Below the pieces are notes generated by a model, which was not told the origin of the DNA, searched no databases, and was given only the letters and a program-made list of their open reading frames with translations. A stretch of DNA of 63,578 nt, filler included, from Guillardia theta CCMP2712 (lineage: Eukaryota > Protista > Cryptophyta), in NCBI RefSeq assembly GCF_000315625.1. It is 4 parts of 4 records of this genome, joined end to end, with 100 filler letters (N's around TTAATTAATTAA, not from the genome) between each part and the next. Parts side by side here need not be neighbours in the genome. Positions count along the whole stretch, not along the records: positions 28,018 to 56,342 come from NW_005434521.1; 3 more parts are not named here. One strand, given 5' to 3'. The position numbers and the translations under genes are program-made. Positions within the stretch are counted from its first letter, which is position 1, and each line of letters starts with the position of its first letter. Below are positions 27,918-54,640 of the stretch, one piece after another.

Positions 27918-28405
27918 NNNNNNNNNNNNNNNNNNNNNNNNNNNNNNNNNNNNNNNNNNNNTTAATTAATTAANNNNNNNNNNNNNNNNNNNNNNNNNNN
28001 NNNNNNNNNNNNNNNNNTCCCCTTCGACTCCCCTTCCCCTCCCCTCCCCTCCCCTCCCCTTCGACTCCCCTTCCCCCTCCCCTCCCCTCCCCTCCCCCTT
28101 CGACTCCCCCTTTCCCCTTCCCCTCCCCTTGATCCCCTTGATCCCCTTCCCCTTCCCCCTTCTTCCCTCCTCTCCCCTCTCCTCCCCACCTTTTTTGAAC
28201 CTCCTCCTCCCCTTTTCCTCCCTCCTGCTCCTCTCCTTCCTCCTCCCCTCTCCTCCCCTTGCTCACCCCTCCGTTGCCCCCCCTTCCTTACCCCTCCGCT
28301 GACTCCCTCCGTCATCGCTCTGGTTCGCTCCTCTCCCTCCTGCCACTTCATTTCCTCGTCCTCCGCTACGTTTGCTCGCTTCCAGTGCTCGTCCTGCTCT
28401 GTGTC

Positions 28406-29488
28406 ATGGTGAAAATACTCCAGAGCCTCGTCACTGGACAGATCTTTGCGAAGGAGACCTGGAAGGAGGCAGCAGCTGTAGCCGCTCCTACTGTGAATGT
28501 CACTCTTCGCCGGGCAGTGCATGGCTTCTATCAGCTGCTCCTGTCCATCATCGTTCTGGGGCTCATCTGTGCTCTTGATCTCGTGTCCTGGTCCGAGAGC
28601 ATCTACGACAGCCGGCGGCACATTCCAAGGCACTGCGGGCGCATGCAGCACGACCGGGAAGGGAAGGGCATTCTGCCGGATATCGCATACGGGAGGGAGA
28701 GAAGACGCTATGCCGTGGTGACGCTGCTGACGACGTCCAGCTACGTGAAGCAGGCGGAGGTGCTGGGAAAGTCACTCCTTGTCTACTCCCACCTGCCCTG
28801 CAGCGTCGACATGGTTGTGCTGATCCTGCCGAGGTCGGACGTGACCCACCAGGATGTCGAGCTGCTGTCGCAGGCGGGGTGGATGGTGGAGACCATCCCG
28901 AGGCTAGCCGCGCCCGAACGCATCAACAGCAGCACTGTGAAGCACGCGAGGTATATCCCGCTGGTCTCCAAGCTCGTCCTCTTCAACATGACCCGCTACG
29001 ACGGCATGCTCTACCTTGACTCCGACACGCTGGTGCTCGGAGGCATCGCTGAGCTCTTCAGCCGCCACCTGCCGGAGATGCGGCGCCGAGGGCTGAACCT
29101 GGGATGGGTGAGGGACCAGGGCGAGCAGTTCAGGGCCCGTTCGTTCAACGCCGGCGTCATGCTCGTCGCCCCGTCCAAGCGCGTGTTCGGCCGGCTGATG
29201 CGGTTCCTGCACGAGGGAGCGTTCGAGGTCTCGTTCGCAGAGCAGGGGCTACTGAACGCTTTCTTCGGTCACCACAGCTACGAGCTGGACCAGCGATTCA
29301 ACCTCCTCACCACCGTCCCGCGAGAGAATCGAACGCTCTACGAGAGTATCAAGCATGACGTGCGCATCTTTCACTCCACCTACTTCAAGCCCACCTGCTC
29401 CTTTTACCTCGTGCGATGCTTCTGGCATGGAACGCACGACTTCTGCCGCGAGTGGCAGCGGCTTGAGGCCCTGCAGGTGAAGGTCTGA
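28406..29488 (+). CDS. Glycosyltransferase family 8 (glycogenin/GUX-like), membrane-anchored; start uncertain
   Basis: YAVVTLLTTSSY, SKLVLFNMTRYDGMLYLDSDTLV (DxD), FNAGVMLVAPS, AEQGLLNAFF, RIFHS; hydrophobic segment LLLSIIVLGLICAL. Confidence 0.9.
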   Translation: MVKILQSLVTGQIFAKETWKEAAAVAAPTVNVTLRRAVHGFYQLLLSIIVLGLICALDLVSWSESIYDSRRHIPRHCGRMQHDREGKGILPDIAYGRERRRYAVVTLLTTSSYVKQAEVLGKSLLVYSHLPCSVDMVVLILPRSDVTHQDVELLSQAGWMVETIPRLAAPERINSSTVKHARYIPLVSKLVLFNMTRYDGMLYLDSDTLVLGGIAELFSRHLPEMRRRGLNLGWVRDQGEQFRARSFNAGVMLVAPSKRVFGRLMRFLHEGAFEVSFAEQGLLNAFFGHHSYELDQRFNLLTTVPRENRTLYESIKHDVRIFHSTYFKPTCSFYLVRCFWHGTHDFCREWQRLEALQVKV

Positions 29489-30239: not shown

Positions 30240-31211
30240 CTAGGCCACCTGGCCATCGACCAGGTTGAGCGGAAGGGCTCTGTCGATCTGAGGGCGTGAC
30301 GTCAGCGGCTCTCGCAGGAAGGAGTAAGAGAGACTCTCACCTGCTTGGGGTAGGGGAGGCCGAGGTTGTTCATGATCTCGATGAACTCCTCCTTGTTCTT
30401 CGTCAGCCTCCTGCAGTCACCATCCCCCCGTCAGCATCGCCTGCGCTTCTCTTCCGCCCACTCACGGGTTGAGGGTCTTCTCCTCGAGGACGGTGGAGTT
30501 CATCAAGCCCTTGTAGTCATGGGCTGGGTAGATGATGCACTTGTCCGGAAGAGTGAAGATCTGCGAGCTCCCGTCATCTTTCCTTCCTCCTTGCCGGACA
30601 TGGTACCTTAGAGTGGACAGCATCGTAGAGTCGAGCGGCGCTGCCCTGCTGGAAGTCTGTTCGCCCGCAGCCGCGGATCAGCACGGCGTCTCCCGTGAAG
30701 CACATCACTCCGTCATTGAGCACCTGCCTCCTCCTCGTCAGCCTCCCTCCCTCCTCTCCCCCGCCGCCTCTGCTCCACTCACGTAGCTCACGCAGCCGTC
30801 GGTGTGGCCTGGGGTAGCGCGAACCTCCAGCTTGTGCTGTCCGAACTTGAGCACGTCCCCGTCGTTGATGAACATGTCCGCCTTGGCGCCAGACTTCTCG
30901 GCGATGACGGACTTCATGCCGGGGACAAGCTGCTTGAGCTTCCTGGACATCCCACGCCGTCAGCAAAGGACAAACATGGCTGAGGGAGACAAGACAGACC
31001 CGGTGCCGGTGACGTGGTCGGCGTGGCAGTGAGTGTTGATACCGTAGATGATCTTGAGGCCAAGGTCCTCGGCGAGCTTGGCGTCTCTCTCGGCAGTCTC
31101 GACCACAGGGTCGATGAGGATGGCTTCCTTGGAGGCTTCGTCTCCGAGGAGGTAGGTGTAGGTGCTGCTCTCCTTCTCGAAGAGCTGGCGGAACACGAGA
31201 CCCTGAAGCAT
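30240..31211 (-). CDS. ETHE1: Persulfide dioxygenase ETHE1 (metallo-beta-lactamase fold), copy A; 5' end may extend further
   Basis: [64 protein letters not shown], ending [15 protein letters not shown]. Confidence 0.93.
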
Positions 31212-31439
31212 GTCGTAGTGAACAGGAGCAGAACGGGGGTAAGCTGAGAGGCAGGAAGTGAGTGGGCGAGCAGGGAGGGGGAGGGAAGCAGGAGGGAGGG
31301 GAGGGGAGGGGAGGGGAAGGATTTGTAGACGGGGGCGGAGCAAGTCATGTACTTTACAATGACTTTTAGTAAATGCGATGGGCAGAGGACCCCGCAATTT
31401 GAGGGGAAAAGGGTGGGTGGGGTGAATGACCAGATGGCC

Positions 31440-31870
31440 GTGGCGATGACTGCAACTTAGCGCTGTGACTTCAGTGACACGAATCGCCTGGTGACCGGGG
31501 GGGGCCGGCAATGTCGGCCGCCGCTCAGTGACCCGGCACCGGCGGGGCGGGCGCGGAGCCGTGACTGACTCAGTGAGTCGCTGCCGTACGGTCAGTGCCG
31601 CGGCGGCCGGGCCCGCCGGCCGGGCCATTGCCGCCACTCGGACTACCCCGTGACCGTACCGCCTGGCGGTGACTCTGAACTTGCCGACTCGAGTCCGGGG
31701 CCGGGGCCCAGCTCGGCCGCTGCCATCATGCATGATGCTTGGATTGCCGACGACGGTCCTCCCGGCGGATCGGGCCCCTCAGCCTTGATCGGACCGTAGG
31801 CTCTGGGGGCACTGCCGCTTGAAGCCTGGATGGAGAACACGGCATATCACCGTCCGACTGAGCCCCGCTC
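31440..31870. promoter_or_regulatory. GC-rich GGCC/CCGG intergenic island (one of ~9 in the window), upstream of ETHE1-A
   Basis: Dense GGCC, CCGG, GACTC and CAGTGA words; non-coding position. Confidence 0.4.
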
Positions 31871-32185
31871 AGTGACTTCAATGATAGACCATCAAGGCTT
31901 CTGAGAGACTCAGTGGGATTGAAGTTGTGATGGATCGGGTTGCGAGAGGACCCTACGATATTCACCTTGAATACAAGATGACACATCATATGATACATCA
32001 TCTTACATGGGCAGCTCCATGGCATCGTACACGGGTCGCCGGGAGAGCATGCGTTTCAACCTTGAAATGCAGCTGAAGAAAGACATCGGATTTGTCAGAC
32101 AAGTTGCGAAGCTTTCAGGATGACGGTTGACTTTTTTGACGACGATCAGCAGTTGAGGGAGAGATGTAACATGCTAACTCGAATG

Positions 32186-32265
32186 GACTTCTGTCCGCAA
32201 AGACTTCTGTCCGCAAAGACTTCTGTCCGCAAAGACTTCTGTCCGCAACGACTACTGTCCGCAAA
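32186..32265 (+). repeat. 16-bp minisatellite GACTTCTGTCCGCAAA x5
   Basis: Five adjacent copies; the last two each carry one substitution. Confidence 0.92.
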
Positions 32266-33710
32266 GAAACGTTGCCGGAAAGCCCAGGCTTTGAATGAGG
32301 TCCTCGTGCGGTTTATGCATTGTCCTCCTCTGCCTAGCGATGCTGCTAGTGGGCATGGTCTTTGGCAGACTGGTTTGACATGACATTTCATTTTACCTCC
32401 AATCTCTTCAACTCTCTCTTACGACTCAACAAACATAACCCGCGCCGGGTAGCGACGGCGGCAGATGCTGCAAACGTGCACTGCAACCAAGGTACAGCAT
32501 CATCGCCTTCAGAATGCAATTCATGATCCCCGTCGAGATTTTCTCCCGATCGCTACCATCGACCGACGGTGCAACATACAATCATGTTGAAGGGCTCAAG
32601 CTCTTTCACCTCAACCAGCAGACGCATCGTTCCCTCAACTCCCCGTCTGGTCTACTATCTGAAGTGAGTCGGAGACAAGGGAAAAGGAAATCGGACTGCT
32701 GCCCCTCGTATGAAGGACTTAAAACTCTCTTCAGCTGGTTAAGTGCTGTGACTACTTCTCCAGTTTCCAACTCGACTGGAGCTGGACGTCCTTTACTCCC
32801 TCTCCCTCCCCTTCCTCCTTCTCCTTTCCCCTCCTCCCTCTCCCTCTCCCTTCCTCCCTCTCCCTTCCTCCCTCTCCCTTTCCCTTCTCTCTCTCCTTCC
32901 CCTCCTGCTGTATGGTCGGACAACCGATGTTCAGACCCAGTACCCCACCCCCTCACCCCCGCCTGGATGATGCAATTCACCCACCCCAGGACCCGCTTCA
33001 GACAGTCATAAGTACCCCTGGTCTTTCGAACCACAGTGGAAACAAACGACAACGGATGCAGTCAGGAAGCCACCCCCCCCCCCTCATATCAACCGCCCCC
33101 GTGATCCCCATAGAGAAAAGGGTTCTAGATGGGTTTCCAAAGTCCTCTACACCCAGATCAACTACTTGTAAATTTTTCTAGAGGCGGGGGCTGGCGCACA
33201 AAGATGTGTGGGGCACCCTTTGAANNNNNNNNNNNNNNNNNNNNNNNNNNNNNNNNNNNNNNNNNNNNNNNNNNNNNNNNNNNNNNNNNNNNNNNNNNNN
33301 NNNNNNNNNNNNNNNNNNNNNNNNNNNNNNNNNNNNNNNNNNNNNNNNNNNNNNNNNNNNNNNNNNNNNNNNNNNNNNNNNNNNNNNNNNNNNNNNNNNN
33401 NNNNNNAACATCAGGCACCACTCTTTTCTTCTTTTACTTATTGTCTCATATATGAAAATATTGATCTTTCCCCCCCTCTGTTAAGACTCTCTCTCCAGAG
33501 TACCGGGCAAATACGAGGCGTTGTGTACCCCTACCCCCTACAAAGGTAACATTTCATCGACTACCCTCCAGGGGATTCACCCCACCTCCTCCTGGTGTTA
33601 TCTGCGCCTCTCCTCCCACATCAACCGACTGCCTCCTCAGCAGCAGCCTCTCCCATGCGTTCTCCTCTCCCTCCCTCCCTCCCTCCTCCGCCTCCTCCCA
33701 CCATGAACAC

Positions 33711-34185
33711 ATCCATCTCATCCTCTCCTCCTTTCCTCTCATCCTCCTCCTTCCATGCTCCCGTCCCCTCGCTCTTGCTGCTCCCAGCATCGATCCGTTG
33801 GCTCATGCCGCTCGTGTGTGCGACATTCCTCGCTCGTTCCTCTGCCCGTTGAGTCTTCCCCATGTCTTGTACGTCTTTCCCCTGTCTGACTTTGATTTGT
33901 TGGATCCCTGTAATGTCCACCTGCCGATTCGTCTCTGCCGGAACTTCCCTGTGTCTCAATCCCTAGACTTTTAGTCCAGCCTGCCTACCTCCGTGTCCTC
34001 AAAGTTTGCGAGCTTTCTCTGGATGTAACTGAGTCTGTGACTTCGTGTCCTTCAACCTTGTTCATTCTCATGATCACGTTGCCAATGCTGCTCCTTGGCA
34101 CTTGAAAGATGTCCATGGTTGACCTACTTTTTGCGCAGGTAACCACAGAGGTTGAAATATGGCCGATAAGATGGTGAGGCTTCTG
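33711..34185 (+). repeat. Left arm of ~475-bp inverted repeat (nucleoredoxin upstream region plus first exon)
   Basis: Reverse complement of 36588-37064 with a few substitutions. Confidence 0.9.
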
Positions 34186-35687
34186 TTGAGCAGAGTAGGT
34201 TTGCTGACTCCCTTCCTCTCAGAACGTCTCCTTCAACAAGCTCTTCGGCGACACTTTGTGCAGGAACGAACCTGGCAACGAGGTTGGAACCAAGCACGTC
34301 CTGGAGGGGAAGCAGTATGTCGGAATTCTGTTTGGCGCGTCGTGGTCGGGCTCCTGCAAGCAGTTCATGCAGCCGCTGCAACAAGTCTACAAGAAGCTCA
34401 TCGAGGAGAAGGGAAAGTCGTTCGAGTTGGTGTACGTGCCTGCCACCGTCCCCGGCCGTCCAGAAGAAGACAAGGAGGCGTACAAGGAGCTGCTGGCCAT
34501 GGCGTCCTGGCTTGCTGTGCCTCTCCACAGGAAGTCGGTGCACAAGAAGCTCACCCGCAGGTTTCAAGTGCGACAGATCCCCATGCTGGTGCTGCTGGAC
34601 AGCAACGGCTCGACGGTTCACCGGGACATCACTCCTGCCGTCACCCACATCGTCGAGGATGCCGACGGCGACTCTTTCGCTGACCAGTGAGCTGCTGGCG
34701 CGGGCCAACCCCCCGATGTCGTTCTAAGTCCTAGCGCAGGTTTCCATGGGCTGAGAAGAGGAATACCAACGTGAAGGAGATGCTGGGAGACGTGTTTGTC
34801 AAGGGCGATGGGTCTCAGGTCTCAGTCAAGGAGCTGGACGGCAAGCACGTCGGCATCTTGTTCTCGATGGGTTGGCATTACCAGTGCAAGGGGTGAGAGA
34901 TCCGTTCCCGAGAAGGAGCGCGTGACGTTGCGCCTGCCAGGTTCCATCAGATGCTGGACTACATGTACGAGAAGCTCAAGGAGCAGGGCAAGGCGTTCGA
35001 AGTGATCGACATGGTGAGGGGAAGGAGGAGGAGAGCCAAGGGTTGACGCTTCTGCAGGATTTCTCTCCGAACGTGCCATGGCTGTGCATGCCACAAACAG
35101 CCCACGAGGCGAAGCAGAAGCTCGGAGAGGCGTTCCGCATCGAGAAAGTTCCTTCCATGGTCGTCATCGACCCAGACGGCAACGTCGTGACGACCGAGGG
35201 CGTCGAGATCGTCAACAAGGACACGGACGGAGATTGCTTCCCCTGGACCCCGAAGCCCCTCTACGACCTCTCCACGCTCGAGCCTGAGATCCTAGGAGAG
35301 ATGAACGATACCGTCACGTGCGTCCTCCTCTGCGAAGGCTGCGACGAGGCGACCAAGGCAGCGATGGCGGAGGCAATGCTGCCTGTGGCGGAGGAGGCCT
35401 TCTGCGCTGCCAAGATGAGCGGGTGCGAAGCTGGAATGCTCTTCTTCACTGCCACGGAGACGAGCGACGTCGTTTACCAGCTGCGCCTCTCCTGCGAGCT
35501 CAACGAGCCGACCAGCACCCCCCAGCTGGTGATCCTCGACATTCCCGACTCGGGGGCGTACTACGTGTTCGATGGGGACGACCTGAGCACGGAGAACATC
35601 CGGCAGTTCATCGAGGACTACGACAACGAGCGGCTGGAGAGGAAGGAGCTGCAAGAGGACGAGGAGGAAGCCGGTGAGGGCCAGTAG
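34159..35687 (+). CDS. Nucleoredoxin/tryparedoxin-like protein (two Trx-like domains plus C-terminal Trx-fold domain), non-canonical active sites
   Basis: GKQYVGILFGASWSGSCKQF..FELVYV..WLAVP..FQVRQIPMLVLLD; GKHVGILFSMGWHYQCKGF..PWLCMP..FRIEKVPSMVVIDPDG..FPWTPKP; PQLVILDIPDSGAYY. Confidence 0.88.
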
Positions 35688-35778
35688 AGGATGAACAAGT
35701 TTAACATATCAGATATGTGCCGTGGCAGTCGATTCTAAAGGTTCTTATATGCTCCTCCCCCCTCGCTCCTCCCCCTTC

Positions 35779-38489
35779 TCACGCGGGGGCCCTCCATTCC
35801 TTCACCGCAGCTCCTGCTGGTGCTCCTCGCTCGAACCTTCCCGAGAAGATCGTGATTCCTTGAGAGGAGATCAGCTCTCCTTCCCCCTGCGCTTCTCCTT
35901 CCTCAAACTGCCCCACGTACTTGCTGCCGTCGTCGTACACGAACGTGCCCCAGCCCTGGGGGATCCCCTCCTGCATCCCACCCTCGTACTCCCCAAGCAT
36001 CATCCTCTTCCTCCCCTGGTTCACTCCACTGGGAGCCCCTTCCTTCCAGTGCCCCTCCACGTACCCCCCGTCAGGATAGCTCATCCTCCCCTTCCCCTCC
36101 GGCCTCCCTCCCACCAGCTCCCCCTCGTATACATCTCCCCAGAAGAACTGCAGACAGCCTCTCCCCTCTGCCACCCCCCCAGGCACCTCCGCCTCGCTCC
36201 TCCGAGCTGCGAACTCTCCCGTGTAAGTGTTGCCGTCGGGAAAGGAAGCTACCCCCCTGTGAGCGCTTGTCAAGTGATAAAGGAGCGAGCGCGAATGTGG
36301 TGGTGGTGGAGGAGGAGGGGAGGAGGAGGAGGGTGATGGGGTGGAGGTGTGCAGAGGGAGGAGTTGGTGGTTGTGTGGCCGTGGATGTGGGGGAGACAAA
36401 GCCAAAAGGGGGGGGAGGCGGGGCAGTGCCCTCGCCAGATGGAGTTCGCGGGGGATGATTCTCTCTGTTGGATTTTTGTTGTTTGGGNNNNNNNNNNNNN
36501 NNNNNNNNNNNNNNNNNNNNNNNNNNNNNNNNNNNNNNNNNNNNNNNNNNNNNNNNNNNNNNNNNNNNNNNNNNNNNNNNNNNNNNNCAGAAGCCTCACC
36601 ATCTTATCGGCCATATTTCAACCTCTGTGGTTACCTGCGCAAAAAGTAAGTTCAACCATGGACATCTTTCAAGTGCCAAGGAGCAGCATTGGCAACGTGA
36701 TCATGAGAATGAACAAGGTTGAAGGACACGAAGTCACAGACTCAGTTACATCCAGAGAAAGCTCGCAAACTTTGAGGACACGGAGGTAGGCAGGCTGGAC
36801 TAAAAGTCTAGGGATTGAGACACAGGGGAAGTTCCGGCAGAGACGAATCGGCAGGTGGACATTACAGGGATCCAACAAATCAAAGTCAGACAGGGGAAAG
36901 ACGTACTAGACATGGGGAAGACTCAACGGGCAGAGGAACGAGCGAGGAATGTCGCACACACGAGCGGCATGAGCCAACGGATTGATGAAGGGAGCAGCAA
37001 GAGCGAGGGGACGGGAGCATGGAAGGAGGAGGATGAGAGGAAAGGAGGAGAGGATGAGATGGATTGATTTGGAGGAGGAGGAGGAGGAGGAGGGAGGGGG
37101 ATGTGGGGGGAGGGTTACAAGGAGACCTTCCATCAGGCCTTCCACTTGAAAATTCTCCCTTGTACGTAGCGCCGTTGGACCAGCACATCTCACCCTGCCC
37201 CTTCCTGTCCATCGGTCGGTGGTGGCTACAAGCAGAGCAGGAGCACCTCTCGTCCAGCTGCCACTCGCCCTCGTACCAGGACCTTCCTCCCTCGTAGGAG
37301 CAGCGACCCCTTCCACTGCAGACCGTCAGCGCGATATATGGGGAGGAAGACACGCGCGCACAAGCGAAGCCCGTTCTTGTACTCCCCGATGTACCTGCAG
37401 CAAGTACTTGAATGCTGCACCACCAAAACGCGTCCTCCTCCTCCTTTTTCTCCTTCTCCTCCTCCTCCTCCTCCTCCTCCTCCTCCTCCTCCTCCTCTTA
37501 CTTCATTCCAAGTTGCGGCCACTCGCACTCTCCCTGCCCGTCGCGCTTCCCCCGAACGATCCCTCCTTCATACCACCACTCGTCTCCTCCTTGTTCCCCA
37601 TGAAGTCTACCCGACCCTGCAACAGAGGAGTCATTCCCCACAGCACTTCTCCTCCTCTACCTCGTTGCGGCTTCCCATGTATCCAAGACCCGACGAAGAA
37701 CGATCCATCAGCATACGCCATCCTGCCTTGCCCGTGCGGCTGACTTCCCCTCCAGCTCCCCTCGTACTCGTCCCCGTTGACGTACCGACACGTCCCTTGC
37801 TCGTCGAAGAAGAACTCAAAGTCAACCTCCTTCAGGAGTCCTCCTCCTGCATCATCCTCCTGCTGCTGATCCTCAGCTGTTGTGTTCCTTTTCATCTTCA
37901 CCCTCACATCCCCGGTAAACTCGTATGCCTCTGTCGTCACCCTCCCACTCGCTCGCTCGCATTCCCCGTCCTTCCACGTTCCTTCCAGGTGATCTCCGTT
38001 GGGGAACACAATCCTCCCCTCCCCGTACCTCACATCCTTCCTCCATCCTCCTTCGTACCTCGTCCCATCCACGTATTCGTGATCCCCCTTCACGTCTCTC
38101 AGGAAGGATCGTATCGTTCCCGTGAACACGTCTCCTGACTTATACAACCGCCTCCCCTCGCAAACTCCCTCCTCCCACACGCCTTCGATCACGTCCCCAT
38201 TCTCCAGCTTGCAGCTTCCCATCCCTCTCAGCCTCCCTCCCTCGAACGTCCCCGTGTACAGAGCTCCTGCTGCCTTCACCCAGTAGCTCCCGGTCCCCGT
38301 CGGCTCGAATTCAGTCCGCATGAACTGCGCGGGGCCCTCGAACTCGTCCCCGTTGGAGAAGCGGAGCCTCTCTGCGTCCTTTCCTTCTCCTTGTAGAATC
38401 TTCTCAGGCCGCAGCTTCTTCACTGCGAACCCTCCCGCGCTCCTCGAGCCCCTCCTGTCTCCTCCCGACGACGCCATAGGGGCTGCCAT
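35779..38489 (-). CDS. MORN-repeat protein (multi-exon; spans a gap and the duplicated segment)
   Basis: Many YEGxW/F..G..HG.G....DG..Y repeats in ORFs 37503-38489, 36886-37353 and 35779-36405. Confidence 0.85.
36588..37064 (-). repeat. Right arm of ~475-bp inverted repeat, inside a MORN-gene intron, truncated by a gap
   Basis: Reads MADKMVRLL on the minus strand, like the nucleoredoxin start. Confidence 0.88.
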
Positions 38490-38504
38490 TTAGCTAGCAG
38501 TCCA

Positions 38505-38830
38505 GGCTCTATCGGCGCGGGGTACTCCGAAAGCCACTGCGGCGGGCCGGGCCGGGCCGGGCCGCCGCCGGGCCGGCGGCCGGGCGGGCCTAGCGGAGGC
38601 CGCCCGGACTGTCGCAACTGAGGCCCACCGGGGGCCGGGCCGGCGGCGGCCGCTGAGCCCAAACGCCGCCGGTGCCTGAGGCCCTGAGGCCCGGGCCGCC
38701 AGTCCGGCCCGGTGACGATGAATCGGCGGGCCGAGTGGCGCGGCAGTGAGGCTGGCGGCAACCACTCGGGAAGTTTTAAACTTGGTCAGTTTTAATCGGC
38801 CCCCGAACCTGGCGGGACCATCGGTCAGTA
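38505..38830. promoter_or_regulatory. GC-rich GGCC/CCGG island directly upstream of the MORN gene
   Basis: e.g. GGCGGGCCGGGCCGGGCCGGGCCGCCGCCGGGCCGGCGGCC; followed by a GGGGTA-rich tract at 39030-39700. Confidence 0.4.
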
Positions 38831-39869
38831 GTGATGGCCAAAAAAAAGTCCGATGATGACTGAAAATTTAACGGGCCAGCCTCAAGACTCGGTAATAGGG
38901 ATCAGCTTCTATGTGAGAAGGACATCAAATAGTCCTATCAATTTCTTCTATCAAATGTTTTGCTGCCTTCCGCTGGTCCTGTCAACAAATTTGTTTTCAA
39001 GGTCACTGACGATCATGCATCAAGATGTACCCCTACTTTTACCTGAAAGACAAGTCAAATACTAGGGTAGGGTATACGCGCCAAGGGCGAGGCATGACCA
39101 GCAGATGACCAAAGCCGCCGTTGGCCCCTTGCCATCAAAAGGTGTAGTCACTATCGGGGTGGGTATCTACATCGTGATTACCGGTTCTGATTACTGATAA
39201 AATGGGGGTAGATTAAGTTGAGGGGTATAAAAGGACCGGGTAGTGTCAGAGTCATGTAGCATCTCGAATCGAGAAGTTGTTCTCGTTGAAGGTACCATAA
39301 ATTTTAGAATCGAAGGTCGGGTGGGTGGGGTGGGGTGGGGTGGGGTTATGGACGTAGGGATAGGGGGTCCTAGTTGAAAGGGTGGTGATGGGATGCTTTA
39401 CTGTTCACTTTACAAAGGGTGGGGTACTTGAGATACGACCCCCACGTCGTAATTACAACAGGGGGGTGGTCAGGGTGGTAGAATTCTGCTAAAGTTGCAG
39501 TAGAGGCGGAAGGGGGTGGGTCCAGATAGATGTGCTGGTGGTTGATCACTCCAGGAGGGGTAGGGGGGGTAGCCAGGTGCAAGAGGAGAGCGTATGTAGG
39601 GGTACTTTAGCGGTAAAAATAGGGGGTAGTATCTGCCAATGGGGTGTATGACCAGAGGACATCCAAAAAGAATGGACATAAAAGTATTATAGGGGATGTG
39701 ACTTGACGGTTACGCGATGAGCCCTTTCGAAACGGTGATCCCTATATTAAGCTCCTCCTCCTCGTCTCTCCCTCACTCCGTCGCCTCCTCCCGCCCCTCC
39801 CACGGGACAAGAACATCTTCAACACCAGCCCTCTGCATAGCATCAACCCCCCCTCCCCCCTCCATCACC

Positions 39870-40853
39870 ATGGCAAACTCCGTTCCCGGCCTTGTCTTCC
39901 GCCAGCTCTTCGAGAAGGAGAGCAGCACCTACACCTACCTCCTCGGAGACGAAGCCTCCAAGGAAGCCATCCTCATCGACCCTGTGGTCGAGACTGCCGA
40001 GAGAGACGCCAAGCTCGCCGAGGACCTTGGCCTCAAGATCATCTACGGTATCAACACTCACTGCCACGCCGACCACGTCACCGGCACCGGGTCTGTCTTG
40101 TCTCCCTCAGCCATGTTTGTCCTTTGCTGACGGCGTGGGATGTCCAGGAAGCTCAAGCAGCTCGTCCCCGGCATGAAGTCCGTCATCGCCGAGAAGTCTG
40201 GCGCCAAGGCGGACATGTTCATCAACGACGGGGACGTGCTCAAGTTCGGACAGCACAAGCTGGAGGTTCGCGCTACCCCAGGCCACACCGACGGCTGCGT
40301 GAGCTACGTGAGTGGAGCAGAGGCGGCGGGGGAGAGGAGGGAGGGAGGCTGACGAGGAGGAGGCAGGTGCTCAATGACGGAGTGATGTGCTTCACGGGAG
40401 ACGCCGTGCTGATCCGCGGCTGCGGGCGAACAGACTTCCAGCAGGGCGATCCTGGCCTCCTTTACGAGTCTGTTCACTCAAAGGTAAAATCATTGCCATT
40501 GGGGGAGAAGGGAGGCTGACGGGAGCTCGCAGATCTTCACTCTTCCGGACAAGTGCATCATCTACCCAGCCCATGACTACAAGGGCTTGATGAACTCCAC
40601 CGTCCTCGAGGAGAAGACCCTCAACCCGTGAGTGGGCGGAGGAGAAGCGCAGGCGATGCTGACGGGGGGATGGTGACTGCAGGAGGCTGACTAAGAACAA
40701 GGAGGAGTTCATCGAGATCATGAATAACCTCGGCCTCCCCTACCCCAAGCAGGTGAGAGTCTCTCTTACTCCTTCCTGCGAGAGCCGCTGACGTCACGCC
40801 CTCAGATCGACAGAGCCCTGCCGCTCAACCTTGTTTGCGGAATTCAGGACTGA
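39870..40853 (+). CDS. ETHE1: Persulfide dioxygenase ETHE1, copy B
   Basis: [42 protein letters not shown], ending [15 protein letters not shown]; same intron positions as copy A. Confidence 0.95.
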
Positions 40854-41153: not shown

Positions 41154-42657
41154 TTACTGCGTACGCATGATCGCTGATCTCAGAGAATCGATCAGCTCCA
41201 TGTCGTTTACGTCATCCCCGCTCATCTTGTTGTTCGTAGCTGCCTCCTTCTCCTTGTTCACCCCTTCTCTCGGTCCATCCTGACTGGCAACTTCCTGCGA
41301 ACCAGACAAGTCACACTCAAGGAGGACGCAGCTAGCTGTCACCTCCTCCACCACCTCCGACACGACGCAAGTCACATCGTCCAGCTTGCCGGCCGTTCGC
41401 TTCTCGTCGCTGCGCCCTTGTAAGGGACTGGCAACGACCATGGACAGCACCTGAAGAGCTGGTTGTGCCGCTCGTTGAAGGGAGTTCTAACTGAAGTCGC
41501 CAGCCCTTTCCTGCATTGACAGTGAGCTGACCAAGAGCAGACCAGGAAAAACAGACTTGATGGAGAGGTTGGCGATAAGATGCGCAGCCACCTTCAAGTC
41601 TCCTTTGGCTGAGCACAATGCCTGGAACATGCGAGGACATTACTGGAGGAGGGATGCTGAAGGGCAGGCTGACACTGACCTGCATCACCTCTTCATCGAA
41701 CAAGTTGTCCCACACACCATCCGTGGCCATCAGCACGACGTCGCCAGGATTCGCCTTGTACTCCCACGCGTCGCCTGAGCTGGGCTTATCGGAGTAGGGT
41801 CCGAAGGAGAGCTGGAAGGGCATGTTGAAGCGGTGCTGCTGCTCTTTCGTCCTGTACACCATGTCGTACGTATGAGCTTGCTTGCTCCGAGGCTTCACTA
41901 CCATGAAGCCGGAGTCTCCCACGTTCAACGTCTTCAGCACACCCTGATACAAAACCGCGACACAGGCTGTGGAGCTCCCCAGGAGCTGCGTGTACTCACG
42001 CGCTCGTTCGAGGGCCTTGAGAGGGCAGGGGTCCTTGGACGCTACAAGATTCTCCCTCGTCAATGCCATCAGCCTCCTGCTGTACTCCCCTGCGTCGACT
42101 CCCTCCGATGCCCACCTGTGCCATGTGAGCTAGAAGTCCTCTAGAGAGCAAGCAGCGATACCCTCCAACTCCGTCTGCTACCCCGATCGCACTCAGAGCT
42201 CTCACTGGGGTGCACATGTCAGACAACAACAGCGGCATGATCAGACGCCATGCTGTAGCGAACACGAACAATCATTCCAGTCGCAACTCAAAAAAAGTTG
42301 CGACCGAATGGAATCGGTCGCCAGTGTCCAACAACATCAAAGGGGAGCAACATGATGGGTTGCTCGTGGACAAGGAAAGGGGGGGGTGTGGGAGGAGAGG
42401 TAAAGTGAGACTATGGGCATGCCTGCGACGAGAGGGTAAAGGCTGGGACTGAGAATGCAGAAAGAGCAGCAGGAGCGCAAGGAGCAGCAGGAGCAGATGG
42501 AGGGGGGAGGGGGAGGAAGACCTCTGTCTCTCAACATGAAGCTTGCGTCCTCTCCTCTCTTCTTGCTCGGATGCGCAACCTCCGCCATGAAGCTTCGCAG
42601 CATCAGCCTCAGTCCCCTCGACATGGTTTCGCCCTCTGTGAGCCAGCCTCGGAACAT
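41154..42657 (-). CDS. PTC7: PP2C-family phosphatase, PTC7 type
   Basis: HPSKKRGEDA, IGVADGVGG, GSSTACVA, NVGDSGF, EQQHRFNMPFQL, MATDGVWDNLF, GKLDDVTCVV. Confidence 0.88.
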
Positions 42658-42985
42658 GGTCTGGTCACCCCACCCCCGTATTCGGAGAATATCAGTACCC
42701 TACCATATCAAATGTAGAAACAATGAGCTAAAAGTACCCCTAAAATGGACCACCCACCCCTAATGTACACGGACATATTCGCAACAAGGGATGAGGGGGA
42801 TGATATCGCGACCGAAATAAATGTTCGACACATTGCACCATGTAAGTGAAGAGGAGGAGGAGGAGGAGGAGGAGGAGGAGGAGGAGGAGGAGGAGGAGGA
42901 GGAGGAGGAGGAGGAGGAGAGGGGAGAGAGAGAGAAGAAAGGAGAGAAGTTGAGATGGCAGATGATGAGAAGAGGACAAGAAAAG

Positions 42986-43098
42986 GAAGAAATGAGAGGA
43001 GAAGTAGAGGAAGAAATGAGAGGAGAAGTAGAGGAAGAAATGAGAGGAGAAGTAGAGGAAGAAATGAGAGGAGAAGTAGAGGAAGAAATGAGAGGAGA
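42986..43098 (+). repeat. 24-bp purine-rich tandem repeat (GAAGAAATGAGAGGAGAAGTAGAG) x~4.5, next to (GAG)n
   Basis: Visible tandem copies. Confidence 0.85.
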
Positions 43099-44768: not shown

Positions 44769-46317
44769 ATGGATACCGTAGCGACGCACATCTCCAGGGC
44801 TCTTGGGGTGCCAGGGCAGGAGGAGGAGGGTGTGAACGAGCCCTTGTGCGCAGACAACCAGCAGAGGCTTCAGGGTCGAGGTATCGCCAAGGAAAACTCC
44901 ATCAGCGCCTTGGTGGAGAACCCCAGGAACCCTTCCAAGGTTCTCTCCGCGTGCCTCTCCCTCCTCTTCGTCGTCATCGCCGTCCTCGTCTTCGCCGCCT
45001 CCGCGAAGATGGCGATTGATCCAGGGACCGCGGAGGTCAGCCACAAGCAGGTAATGCAGGAGGAGGAGGAGGAGGAGGAGGAGGAGGAGGAGGAGGAGGA
45101 GGAGGAGGAGGAGGAGGGACTGGCTGATCCCAGCAAGATGCATGCGATAGAGAAGAAGATCAAACGACAAATCAAGTCAAGCATGAAGAGCTCTCTCGTC
45201 CTCCAGCGCAAGGTTCGCCCCCTCCATCACTCCCACCCCTTCCATGCTCCCCGTCCTCTACCTGTCCAGCACCCTCCTTCCTCCTCAACCACCACCACCA
45301 CCACCACTCGAAGGTTCCTCCCCCTGCCCCACTCCACGACTCCTCCTCTCTTGCCTTGCGTTGACTCAGGATCAGGCGGCCAAGGAGAGCGACGTGGATG
45401 GCAAGGAGATGGAGAAACTGAGAAAGCAAGTGAAGGACCTCCAGCGACAGATTCACTCGCTCGTCTCTGAGCAGGTCCCTTCCCCTCCCCCTCCCCCTCC
45501 CCCTCATCTCACTCATCCCAACCTCTCTCGCCCACCCTAACCTCCTCCTCGTCCTCCTCGTCCTCGACCCTTCCCCTGACCTCTTCCATCGCCTCTCCCC
45601 ACTTCATCTATCCTTCTCCTCACTATCTCGCAGAAACAAGAGAGCGTCATAGTTCCGGAGGCTATCGTGCAGTCTCCGAGAGGTTACCCTGGTTCGAGTG
45701 AAATCCAACCGAGATTCGTTATTGGACCCTCAAGGTCCTCCTTTCTCCTCCTCCTCCTCCATTCTCTCCTCCACCACCACCACCACCTCCTCCTCCTCCT
45801 CCTCCTCCTCCTCCTCCTCCTCCTCCTCCTCCTCCTCCTCCTCTTCCTCCTCTCCTCTCTTCTGCTTTCCTTCCTCCTCCTTTCTTTCCTTCGTCCTCCT
45901 TTCTCTCCTCCTCCTCCTCCTCCTGCTACTACTGCTACTCCTTCTCCTCCCCTTCTCCATCATCGTCCTCTGACTCCTAAACCTCCTCATCTTCATTTCA
46001 TTTACTTTTCCCTTCCTCCCTCCCCTTCACTCACATGCTCATCTTCAGGATTGTCACCCCCAACTCGCGCATGGCGGTCACCTTTGCTCCTGTTGCTTCG
46101 GCACATCTCTCATCTTTTCCCCAGGGCTTCTTCTACCCCAGCAGCAGACAGCAGATCCCCCAGCCTCCCGCTAGCCTACCGGCCGCCAGCACTTCAGCCG
46201 GTGAGGAGGAGGAGCAGGGAGAGGAGGGGGGCAGCAGGAAAGCTGACAGGGAAGCTGACATGCCTCGCAGGGTCGCGAGCGCGCGAGGTATTCAGAGAAG
46301 AAATGAAGGGCAAGTGA
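44769..46317 (+). CDS. Hypothetical single-pass membrane protein with short coiled coil
   Basis: VLSACLSLLFVVIAVLVFAASA TM segment; exon EMEKLRKQVKDLQRQIHSLVSEQ; several AG/GT-bounded exons separated by CT-rich introns. Confidence 0.5.
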
Positions 46318-53297: not shown

Positions 53298-54640
53298 TCA
53301 AATCGCCTTCTTAGCTTGAAGGCCCTCTGCTGCCCCCTCTCCCTCTGCCTCTTCTCCTTGACTCCTCTCGACGTCCCTCGCCGAGTTCACGATGGCAATA
53401 ATTGAGACAACGAGAGCGGCGATGGCGATCACGAAGCTGAGGCAGAAATCAGCAACACGAGAGCTGGAGGGAGGGGAGGGAGAGGCAGGAGGGAGGCAGG
53501 ACATGGATGGATGGAGCGCTAGACCTGACAAGAGCGAAGACGAAGGCAGCGGTGGTTAATGAGAGAGCATCCAAGTTGGATATGCGAAGACCTCCCGTCA
53601 TGTGGATCGGCGACTTTGAGGTGCCAGGGAACTCATCTTGAAGGAAGAGCGTGAGAGACTGTAGGAACTGCTCCCTCTTCTCCCTCCCCTGANNNNNNNN
53701 NNNNNNNNNNNNNNNNNNNNNNNNNNNNNNNNNNNNNNNNNNNNNNNNNNNNNNNNNNNNNNNNNNNNNNNNNNNNNNNNNNNNNNNNNNNNGGGAAAAA
53801 GGTGATGCAGTCACGGGGCGAAAAGGTTAAGGGGGCTGGAGAGAACAGGAGGAGAAGGAGGGAGAGAGGGATCAGGAGAAGGAGGGAGAGAGGGATCAGG
53901 AGGATAAAGTGGGAGGGAGGGATGGAGGGCAGATGGACGCAAACAAGAAGTAGCGGCAGCGCTCTATGTAGATACCTGAAGGAGACGCGAGGGGGAGGAG
54001 AAGAGAGTCATGCTCGTATTGCAGATGCCTCCACGTCTCTCGCTCAGCTTGATGTGTCGATGAGATGAAGTCGCTCTTCCTCTGACCTCCTCCTCGGGGC
54101 TCTGGTCGTGATGGCTCCCCGACGAGAGGGAGGAGGCCGACTCCTCGTCACCATGGCTTCTCTCTCCGCCCTCCTCCAGCTCTCGGGTTCTCACGGTCAG
54201 TCCGGCTACCGGGAAGCAGCTGTCTCGCAGCCGCTGGCTCCTCTTGCCTTCGCTCCCTCATGGGTCAAACTCGCCCCCGACGCTTCTCGGTCAAGGAAGG
54301 AGGCTGGGTGGAGGTGAGAGTGAGGCGGGAGGAGGTAGAGGTTCTGATGGGAGGAGCAGGCATGCGGAGGGCCCGAGACGTGTTCCGATCTTCCTCTCCT
54401 CTGCAGGATCTCGCAGGGTGAGGGAGGGCTGTGAGTTGGCATGAGCATGACAGGTTGTGACAGGTTGCTTGCAACCTTGAAGATGCACCTCGCCCCCCCC
54501 GTAGCGAGGTTCTTGTTTCATCGCCTCTTCCTGCCATCGCCTCATCGTTTCCTTAGAACATCTCGTTGAGCGGCGCGCGAGGAGACAAGAAGAGTCGAGT
54601 TGAAAACTCGAGCGATGTGCGGCCACCAACACTCTCCTCC
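53298..54640 (-). CDS. Hypothetical protein with C-terminal TM segments (gapped)
   Basis: Exons ..LSLTTAAFVFALV| and FCLSFVIAIAALVVSIIAIVNSARD..KKAI*. Confidence 0.4.

What the first reader, a model, noticed from the sequence alone, without database searches (positions are those of the whole stretch)
30240..40853. Roughly concentric double inverted-repeat sulfur/redox locus: ETHE1-A < nucleoredoxin > < MORN | ETHE1-B >
Seen: two near-identical ETHE1 genes point outward at 30240-31211 (-) and 39870-40853 (+). A second inverted pair (33711-34185 and 36588-37064) lies inside them. The two pairs have midpoints at ~35.5 kb and ~35.4 kb, at the 3' end of the nucleoredoxin gene. Known: ETHE1 oxidises glutathione persulfide, and thioredoxin-fold proteins can reduce protein persulfides. 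Inference: this could be a small persulfide-handling cluster formed by a fold-back duplication, and the enclosed segment could invert by recombination between the arms.
Basis: partly seen in the sequence, partly recalled or inferred. Interest (0 to 1): 0.75.

Follow-up and report, generated by a model that had tools for sequence, protein, structure and literature searches.

The report
Two nested inverted duplications, Guillardia locus
In a nuclear scaffold of the alga Guillardia theta, two ETHE1 genes face away from each other and are kept almost identical by gene conversion, and a stray copy of the neighbouring nucleoredoxin-like gene's start sits inside a MORN gene intron; both repeats are real, but they look like ordinary local duplications, not a purpose-built sulfur cluster or switch.

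Summary
Both inverted pairs exist. The outer pair is 30262-31202 and 39888-40831 (947 aligned bases, 96.2%). The inner pair is 33673-34185 and 36588-37098 (515 bases, 97.1%).

The piece is Guillardia theta CCMP2712 nuclear DNA. The two ETHE1 genes match the GenBank proteins EKX34146 and EKX34149. The nuclear genome is reported haploid, so the copies are unlikely to be alleles.

The ETHE1 pair is a mosaic. A 551-base tract has 1 difference, a 69-base patch has 29, and a 303-base tract has 3. The flanks do not align. This is the pattern of gene conversion between old paralogs.

The inner right arm is only the promoter, exon 1 and the start of intron 1 of the nucleoredoxin-like gene. A 100-N gap cuts it off. 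It lies inside an 870-base intron of the MORN gene, whose six-exon model stays in frame across that gap.

The stretches between the outer and inner arms are unrelated, so there is no single palindrome. None of 19 related nucleoredoxin-like loci from metagenomes carries ETHE1 or MORN. The nucleoredoxin-like protein lacks the catalytic CxxC motif.

The near-concentric layout is probably coincidence. Inversion of the enclosed segment was not tested. Interest is low.

The parts
30240..31202 (-). ETHE1-A (GUITHDRAFT_166280, EKX34146.1). Exons 31000-31202, 30783-30942, 30607-30723, 30466-30560, 30341-30410 and 30240-30287. The annotation adds an upstream exon at 31590-31628 across a 387-nt intron.
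   Evidence: Database protein P0147 was threaded onto the window. Pfam Lactamase_B hit.
39870..40853 (+). ETHE1-B (GUITHDRAFT_155822, EKX34149.1). Six exons: 39870-40090, 40148-40307, 40367-40483, 40533-40627, 40683-40752 and 40806-40853. Introns are 49-59 nt.
   Evidence: P0027 threads exactly onto the window. E=7e-100 to human ETHE1 4CHL over the full length.
30262..31202 (.). Outer inverted repeat, left arm.
39888..40831 (.). Outer inverted repeat, right arm.
40448..40516 (.). Divergent patch in the ETHE1 pair: 29 differences in 69 bases, spanning the end of exon 3 and the start of intron 3. Its partner in copy A is 30577-30642. The tracts on either side are 99-99.8% identical.
33673..34185 (.). 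Inner inverted repeat, left arm. It holds the upstream region, exon 1 (34159-34173, MADKM) and the first 12 nt of intron 1 of the nucleoredoxin-like gene. This is the original copy.
36588..37098 (.). Inner inverted repeat, right arm. It is a partial copy of the nucleoredoxin-like 5' end on the minus strand. The gap truncates it on one side; on the other it ends in a (CCT)n/(CCCT)n tract.
34159..35687 (+). Nucleoredoxin-like gene, five exons (34159-34173, 34223-34686, 34740-34892, 34941-35013, 35058-35687), 444 codons. Motifs are WSGSC, WHYQC and CEGC.
35779..38489 (-). MORN-repeat gene, six-exon model (38489-37661, 37616-37502, 37394-37362, 37315-37247, 37204-37127, 36256-35779). All junctions are GT-AG and the total is 1602 nt, divisible by 3.
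36257..37126 (-). Intron 5 of the MORN gene, 870 nt as assembled. It holds the right inner arm and the 100-N gap. The other MORN introns are 44, 107, 46 and 42 nt.
36488..36587 (.). Assembly gap of 100 N, which looks like a placeholder length. It lies inside MORN intron 5 and cuts the right inner arm.
33225..33406 (.). Assembly gap of 182 N in apparently non-coding spacer between ETHE1-A and the nucleoredoxin-like gene. No gene crosses it.

Best explanation
The locus carries two separate local inverted duplications in a haploid nuclear genome. (1) ETHE1-A and ETHE1-B are old paralogs 8.7 kb apart, and repeated gene conversion keeps them almost identical, introns included. ETHE1-B is the conserved form. 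ETHE1-A has its own N-terminus, a divergent 69-base patch, and a C-terminus that has lost a Cys conserved in nearly all relatives. (2) A copy of at least 511 bases of the nucleoredoxin-like gene's promoter, exon 1 and intron start was inserted upside-down into an intron of the neighbouring MORN gene. One junction lies in CT-rich microsatellite that is present at both sites, so I infer a microhomology-guided template switch or break repair. This fragment is probably a non-functional by-product. The near-concentric layout is most likely coincidence. Shown: the repeats, the mosaic, the gene models and the lack of conserved linkage. Inferred: the gene-conversion mechanism, the template-switch origin and the lack of function of the fragment.
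For: Both repeats are significant. Species identity: the spliced ETHE1-B equals EKX34149.1 and ETHE1-A equals EKX34146.1 of G. theta CCMP2712. The G. theta nuclear genome is reported haploid (PMC4007541), so 1-3% divergent copies are not alleles. Mosaic: 39897-40447 has 1 difference in 551 bases, 40448-40516 has 29 in 69, and 40517-40819 has 3 in 303. The flanks are unalignable, and all four exon differences outside the patch are synonymous. The B-type ends (MA..GL[VI]FRQLFEK at the start, NLVCGIQD at the end) are shared with the other top hits (P0028, an unnamed protein from a Logan assembly; P0031, Hemiselmis; P0045 and P0048, Rhodomonas). Among the 68 hits where the motif could be read, 66 have Cys at the position where ETHE1-A has Asp. 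The inner right arm is only the 5' end of the nucleoredoxin-like gene. The MORN model is in frame across it and across the gap, and the junction keeps the MORN register (..GRPDG R GVASFPDGNTYTGEF). The spacers are unrelated at DNA and protein level. No linkage appears in 19 related loci.
Against: The right inner arm sits at a contig end beside a placeholder gap, so its extent and even its reality rest on one assembly. The two midpoints differ by only 160 bases. By my arithmetic, a randomly placed nested inner pair would come this close about 6% of the time, which is mildly suggestive of a common origin. No transcript or population data were available. Gene conversion is inferred from one genome.
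Confidence: 0.6

Rival explanations
1. The inner right arm is an assembly artefact: a chimeric contig end or a mis-scaffolded contig. In that case only the ETHE1 pair is real.
For: The arm ends exactly at a 100-N gap and sits in an intron of 870 nt, in a locus where 17 of the other 18 modelled introns are 42-59 nt and one is 107 nt (leaving aside the doubtful 387-nt intron of the ETHE1-A annotation).
Against: The arms differ at about 7 positions in 480 bases, and these are spread along the arm, not piled up at the contig end. A chimeric reuse of the same haploid locus should be identical. The junction lies in matching CT-rich microsatellite, which is typical of biological microhomology events. 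Flipping contig 33407-36487 would break the in-frame MORN model.
Confidence: 0.15
2. One reading: one fold-back (palindromic) duplication produced both pairs at once, and the spacers were later replaced or diverged.
For: The layout is nested and the midpoints are 160 bases apart. On both sides the order and orientation are the same: ETHE1, then about 2.5-2.8 kb, then the nucleoredoxin-like 5' end. Both pairs show similar divergence of about 1-3%.
Against: There is no residual DNA similarity between 31203-33672 and 37099-39887, and no MORN or nucleoredoxin remnant in the left spacer. The right spacer holds the 5' exons of a MORN gene that reads as intact. The 69-base patch at 58% identity shows that the ETHE1 duplication is much older than the 99.8% tracts suggest. 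The original copies sit on opposite sides.
Confidence: 0.12
3. The locus is a functional persulfide-handling cluster, and recombination between the arms flips the enclosed segment as a regulatory switch.
For: ETHE1 is a genuine persulfide dioxygenase homologue. A thioredoxin-fold gene lies between the two copies. The ETHE1 arms have recombined.
Against: Linkage is absent in all 19 related nucleoredoxin-like loci. The protein lacks the CxxC active site in both tryparedoxin-like modules, and this loss is conserved in its relatives. No recombinase gene lies in the interval, which holds only the nucleoredoxin-like and MORN genes. A full-text search found no paper linking persulfide dioxygenase to nucleoredoxin as a gene cluster.
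Confidence: 0.05

Closest known systems
Concerted evolution of inverted paralog pairs by intrachromosomal gene conversion (for example palindrome arms and inverted segmental duplicates)
   Same: The arms are near-identical, introns included. The tract boundaries are sharp, a patch of old divergence remains, and the flanks are unrelated.
   Different: The arms are short (0.94 kb). There is only one genome, so conversion is inferred from the mosaic and not from comparing species or strains.
Human ETHE1 (PDB 4CHL) and Arabidopsis ETHE1 (PDB 2GCU), persulfide dioxygenases
   Same: The alignment is full-length, with E=7e-100 and 5e-93. The HCHADH, PGHT and TGD motifs are conserved.
   Different: ETHE1-B is 236 aa, against 254-266 aa for the vertebrate proteins named mitochondrial ETHE1, so it seems to lack their N-terminal presequence. 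ETHE1-A has Asp where relatives have the C-terminal Cys.
Animal nucleoredoxin (NXN) and plant NRX1
   Same: The protein is colinear with animal nucleoredoxin across three domains, has two Thioredoxin_8 (tryparedoxin-like) modules, and scores E=1e-35 to 1e-63 against named nucleoredoxins.
   Different: The catalytic WCxPC motif is WH(Y/W)QC in module 2 and WSGSC in module 1. A CEGC pair sits in the third domain. This subfamily was found in cryptophyte transcriptomes and in aquatic metagenomes.
Microhomology-mediated template switching (FoSTeS/MMBIR), which produces small inverted duplications
   Same: The copy is inverted, lies 2.4 kb from its source, and has one junction in shared CT-rich microsatellite.
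   Different: The second junction is hidden in the gap. The mechanism is inferred only.

Membership tests
ETHE1 / persulfide dioxygenase | Metallo-beta-lactamase fold with full-length similarity to characterised ETHE1 | tested here: met
   Pfam Lactamase_B, E=3e-20. E=7e-100 to human ETHE1 4CHL over residues 8-235 and 5e-93 to Arabidopsis 2GCU.
ETHE1 / persulfide dioxygenase | Metal-binding motifs (HxHxDH, a second His in PGHT, and Asp in TGD) | tested here: met
   HCHADH, TPGHTDG and FTGDAV are identical in both copies and align with 4CHL. That these are the metal ligands comes from my own knowledge of ETHE1.
ETHE1 / persulfide dioxygenase | Conserved C-terminal Cys in the ..N..CG.. motif | tested here: met
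   ETHE1-B has [12 protein letters not shown]1-A has NLVDGQVA, so it does not meet this feature. Of the 68 hits where the motif could be read, 66 have Cys.
ETHE1 / persulfide dioxygenase | Glutathione persulfide dioxygenase activity | not testable with these tools
   This needs an enzyme assay.
Nucleoredoxin | Tandem tryparedoxin-like thioredoxin-fold modules followed by a C-terminal PDI-b'-like domain | tested here: met
   Thioredoxin_8 appears twice. Tryparedoxin structures match both modules. The protein is colinear with Biomphalaria nucleoredoxin.
Nucleoredoxin | Catalytic WCxPC dithiol motif | tested here: not met
   The window protein has WSGSC and WHYQC. Relatives have WSGSC and WHWQC. 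The aligned nucleoredoxins have WC[GLP]PC.
MORN-repeat protein | Repeated MORN motif (YxGxxxxGxxxGxG) | tested here: met
   Pfam MORN, E=4e-12 and 1e-11, on the two large exons. The motif register continues across all the exon junctions.
Fold-back (palindromic) segmental duplication | Inverted homology that runs continuously along both arms towards a centre | tested here: not met
   Only two short blocks are homologous. The spacers 31203-33672 and 37099-39887 share nothing by BLASTN or TBLASTN.
Gene-converted paralog pair | A mosaic of near-identical tracts and old divergence, with introns homogenised | tested here: met
   Differences run 1 in 551, 29 in 69, then 3 in 303 bases. Introns are identical inside the tracts.
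Invertible DNA switch | Both orientations present in a population, and/or a dedicated recombinase | not testable with these tools
   There is only one assembly. No recombinase-like ORF lies in the interval.
Conserved functional gene cluster (ETHE1 + nucleoredoxin-like) | Linkage kept in related genomes | tested here: not met
   19 related loci were examined. Informative flanks reach 9.1 kb upstream and 6.4 kb downstream. No ETHE1 or MORN hit appears at E<=1, and no other window gene at E<=1e-6.

The most novel reading that the evidence does not exclude
Both nested inverted pairs are footprints of one replication template-switch (fold-back) event. Because the ETHE1 arms still recombine, the 8.7-kb segment carrying the nucleoredoxin-like and MORN genes flips between two orientations in Guillardia populations. 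That would be a recombination-driven invertible segment in a protist nucleus.
Probability: 0.07. Interest if true: 0.5.

Novelty: new member of a known kind. Interest (0 to 1): 0.2.

Why it matters
The locus is a clean small example of gene conversion between inverted paralogs in a cryptophyte nucleus. It also gives a concrete place to check the old gapped Guillardia theta assembly. ETHE1-A, which lacks the conserved C-terminal Cys, may be a diverging or sub-functional copy and is worth a note for anyone studying sulfide metabolism in algae. The analysis does not reveal a new system. I found no support for the persulfide-cluster idea, and the switch idea remains untested.

Tried and rejected
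1. Haplotig or allelic explanation. Rejected: the G. theta nuclear genome is reported haploid and the flanks of both ETHE1 copies are unrelated.
2. Hidden large palindrome. Rejected: TBLASTN with the MORN and nucleoredoxin-like exons finds no remnant in the left spacer.
3. Flipped orientation of contig 33407-36487. Rejected: it would separate the MORN exons, which join in frame as scaffolded.
4. The copied nucleoredoxin-like exon 1 acting as an alternative first exon for the downstream MORN exon. Rejected on reading the sequence: its donor is phase 0 and the acceptor needs phase 2, so the product would run out of frame to an early stop.
5. The full-library protein search with the MORN 3' exon returned only generic MORN proteins at 44% identity or less. 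It gave no orthologue to test continuity and led nowhere.
6. The tree of nucleoredoxin-like C-terminal domains was unresolved. I cannot say whether the metagenome loci are orthologues of the window gene or of its G. theta paralog GUITHDRAFT_88850.
8. A full-text literature search for a persulfide dioxygenase and nucleoredoxin pairing found no paper describing such a cluster.

Exons were searched by reference. The full-length proteins used were database entries (P0027, P0147) or a natural metatranscriptome ORF (L007:673-2055).
Full report
What is there. A self-comparison of the piece (28018-56342) gives exactly two long inverted pairs. They are 30262-31202 against 40831-39888 (947 aligned columns, 96.2%) and 33673-34185 against 37098-36588 (515 columns, 97.1%), both with E=0. 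Every other repeat is GAG/CTC-type microsatellite. The midpoints are 35546 and 35386, both in the last exon of the nucleoredoxin-like gene.

Where it comes from. The exon ORFs hit Lactamase_B, Thioredoxin_8 and MORN. A word search with the first ETHE1 exon returned GUITHDRAFT_155822 of Guillardia theta CCMP2712. This 236-aa protein (P0027, EKX34149.1) threads exactly onto 39870-40853 as six exons. Its cluster mate GUITHDRAFT_166280 (P0147, EKX34146.1) threads onto 30240-31202, plus an annotated upstream exon. The window is therefore G. theta nuclear DNA, and both ETHE1 genes are already annotated. Only two accession numbers lie between them. This fits one nucleoredoxin-like model plus one MORN model, but I did not check it. 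The G. theta nuclear genome is reported to be haploid (PMC4007541), which argues against reading the 1-3% divergent copies as alleles assembled twice.

The gaps. The 182-N gap (33225-33406) lies in apparently non-coding spacer, and nothing crosses it. The orientation of the contig carrying ETHE1-A therefore rests on scaffolding alone. The 100-N gap (36488-36587) lies inside the MORN gene. Reading the minus strand and checking each exon separately in its phase gives a six-exon MORN model: 38489-37661, 37616-37502, 37394-37362, 37315-37247, 37204-37127 and 36256-35779. All junctions are GT-AG and the total is 1602 nt, which is divisible by 3. The junction across the gap reads ..GRPDG R GVASFPDGNTYTGEF, exactly in MORN register. 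The two sides of this gap are thus continuous in gene terms and in frame, which also supports the scaffolded orientation of contig 33407-36487. The intron that holds the gap is 870 nt as assembled. The other MORN introns are 44, 107, 46 and 42 nt. Those of the nucleoredoxin-like gene and of ETHE1 are 44-59 nt, leaving aside the 387-nt first intron of the ETHE1-A annotation.

The outer pair. The ETHE1 alignment is a mosaic. Positions 39897-40447 have one difference in 551 bases. Positions 40448-40516, which span the end of exon 3 and the start of intron 3, have 29 differences in 69 bases. Positions 40517-40819 have three differences in 303 bases. Homology stops about 20 bases into the coding sequence at one end and about 20 bases before the stop codon at the other, and the flanks do not align. 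Introns are as identical as exons, and the four exon differences outside the patch are synonymous. This is what gene conversion between old paralogs looks like; a recent duplicate would diverge evenly. ETHE1-B has the N- and C-termini seen in the other top hits (P0028, an unnamed protein from a Logan assembly; P0031, Hemiselmis; P0045 and P0048, Rhodomonas): MA..GL[VI]FRQLFEK and ..[12 protein letters not shown]1-A ends ..NLVDGQVA and so lacks a Cys that is present in 66 of the 68 hits where the motif could be read. Both copies keep the HCHADH, PGHT and TGD motifs, and ETHE1-B matches human ETHE1 (4CHL) at E=7e-100.

The inner pair. The left arm is the upstream region, the 15-base exon 1 (MADKM) and the first bases of intron 1 of the nucleoredoxin-like gene. 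The right arm is a copy of just that, on the minus strand, starting 28 bases after the donor of MORN exon 5 and running into the gap. Beyond the gap, the end of contig 33407-36487 shows no nucleoredoxin-like homology, so the copy ends inside the gap. The visible junction lies in (CCT)n/(CCCT)n sequence that is present at both sites. Away from that junction the arms differ at about seven positions in 480 bases, spread along the arm. That does not fit a chimeric reuse of one haploid locus. I read it as a real partial inverted duplication inserted in the MORN intron, probably by a microhomology-guided template switch. This last point is inference. Spliced to the next MORN exon, the copied exon 1 would be out of frame, so it is unlikely to encode anything.

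Not a palindrome. BLASTN and TBLASTN find nothing shared between the left spacer (31203-33672) and the right spacer (37099-39887), and the right spacer carries the MORN 5' exons. The original copy is on the right for the outer pair and on the left for the inner pair. If the inner pair were placed at random inside the outer interval, its midpoint would fall within 160 bases of the outer midpoint about 6% of the time (my arithmetic: 320/5260). The exact offset also depends on two estimated gap lengths. I treat the concentricity as probable coincidence.

Not a conserved cluster. A metagenome scan with the last nucleoredoxin-like exon gave 19 related loci at 73-87% identity, some of them intronless transcript contigs. 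Several are long enough to be informative: L009 has 9.1 kb upstream, and L004, L018 and L008 have 6.4, 5.4 and 4.0 kb downstream. None contains ETHE1 or MORN even at E<=1, and none contains any other gene of the window at E<=1e-6. The protein is colinear with animal nucleoredoxin and carries two tryparedoxin-like modules. However, the catalytic WCxPC motif is WSGSC in module 1 and WHYQC in module 2. This loss is conserved across the subfamily, which has WSGSC and WHWQC. A CEGC pair in the third domain is the only dithiol candidate. G. theta has a second member elsewhere, GUITHDRAFT_88850, at 71-81% identity over the two main aligned exons (53% over a short middle stretch). A tree could not resolve which G. 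theta copy the metagenome loci are orthologous to. A full-text search found no paper pairing persulfide dioxygenase with nucleoredoxin as a cluster.

The full-library search with the MORN 3' exon returned only generic MORN proteins. Exon coordinates for ETHE1 came from threading the database proteins onto the window. The nucleoredoxin-like and MORN exons were checked one by one.

Verdict. The repeats are real and the genes are correctly named. The best reading is ordinary genome dynamics: a gene-converting inverted ETHE1 paralog pair, plus an unrelated partial inverted duplication that needs confirming across a gap. Inversion between the arms is mechanically possible but unevidenced. The persulfide-cluster idea finds no support.

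Noticed in passing
window 30240-30287 vs 40806-40853: ETHE1-A ends ..NLVDGQVA and ETHE1-B ends ..[12 protein letters not shown]1-A lacks a C-terminal Cys found in 66 of the 68 hits where the motif could be read. It may be a diverging or partly disabled paralog.
   Followed up: partly
window 31203-31628: The GenBank model of ETHE1-A uses an upstream exon (31590-31628, [13 protein letters not shown]) across a 387-nt intron. That is far longer than the 42-59 nt usual here. An in-frame ATG (MLQGLVFRQ..) sits just upstream of the homology boundary, at 31209-31211, so the annotated N-terminus is doubtful.
   Followed up: partly
window 34340-34360 and 34870-34890; L006, L007, L008, L009, L011: This nucleoredoxin subfamily, seen in cryptophyte transcriptomes and aquatic metagenomes, has WSGSC and WH(Y/W)QC in place of WCxPC, and a conserved CEGC in the third domain. 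This suggests a changed, possibly non-dithiol, chemistry.
   Followed up: partly
window 32186-32267: A 16-base tandem repeat (GACTTCTGTCCGCAAA, about 5 copies, 95% matches) lies in the spacer between ETHE1-A and the nucleoredoxin-like gene.
   Followed up: no
window 42971-43098: A 24-base tandem array (about 5 copies, 95% identical) follows a long (GAG)n run. Long GAG/CTC microsatellites recur through the piece, for example at 37433-37497, 42845-42949 and 45754-45858.
   Followed up: no
P0001 (ENA contig of 1042 nt): A protein 93% identical to MORN exon 1 exists in an ENA assembly. It could come from a close Guillardia relative or from a second copy.
   Followed up: no
window 28259-29488 and 41332-42069: The flanking genes are a GT8 glycosyltransferase-like ORF (plus strand) and a gene fragment with weak Pfam matches to PP2C (below the curated cut-offs; minus strand). 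Neither appears in the related nucleoredoxin-like loci.
   Followed up: partly
window 36488-36587 and 53693-53792: Two gaps are exactly 100 N while the others are 182, 816 and 744 N. The 100-N gaps look like placeholders of unknown length, not estimates.
   Followed up: no
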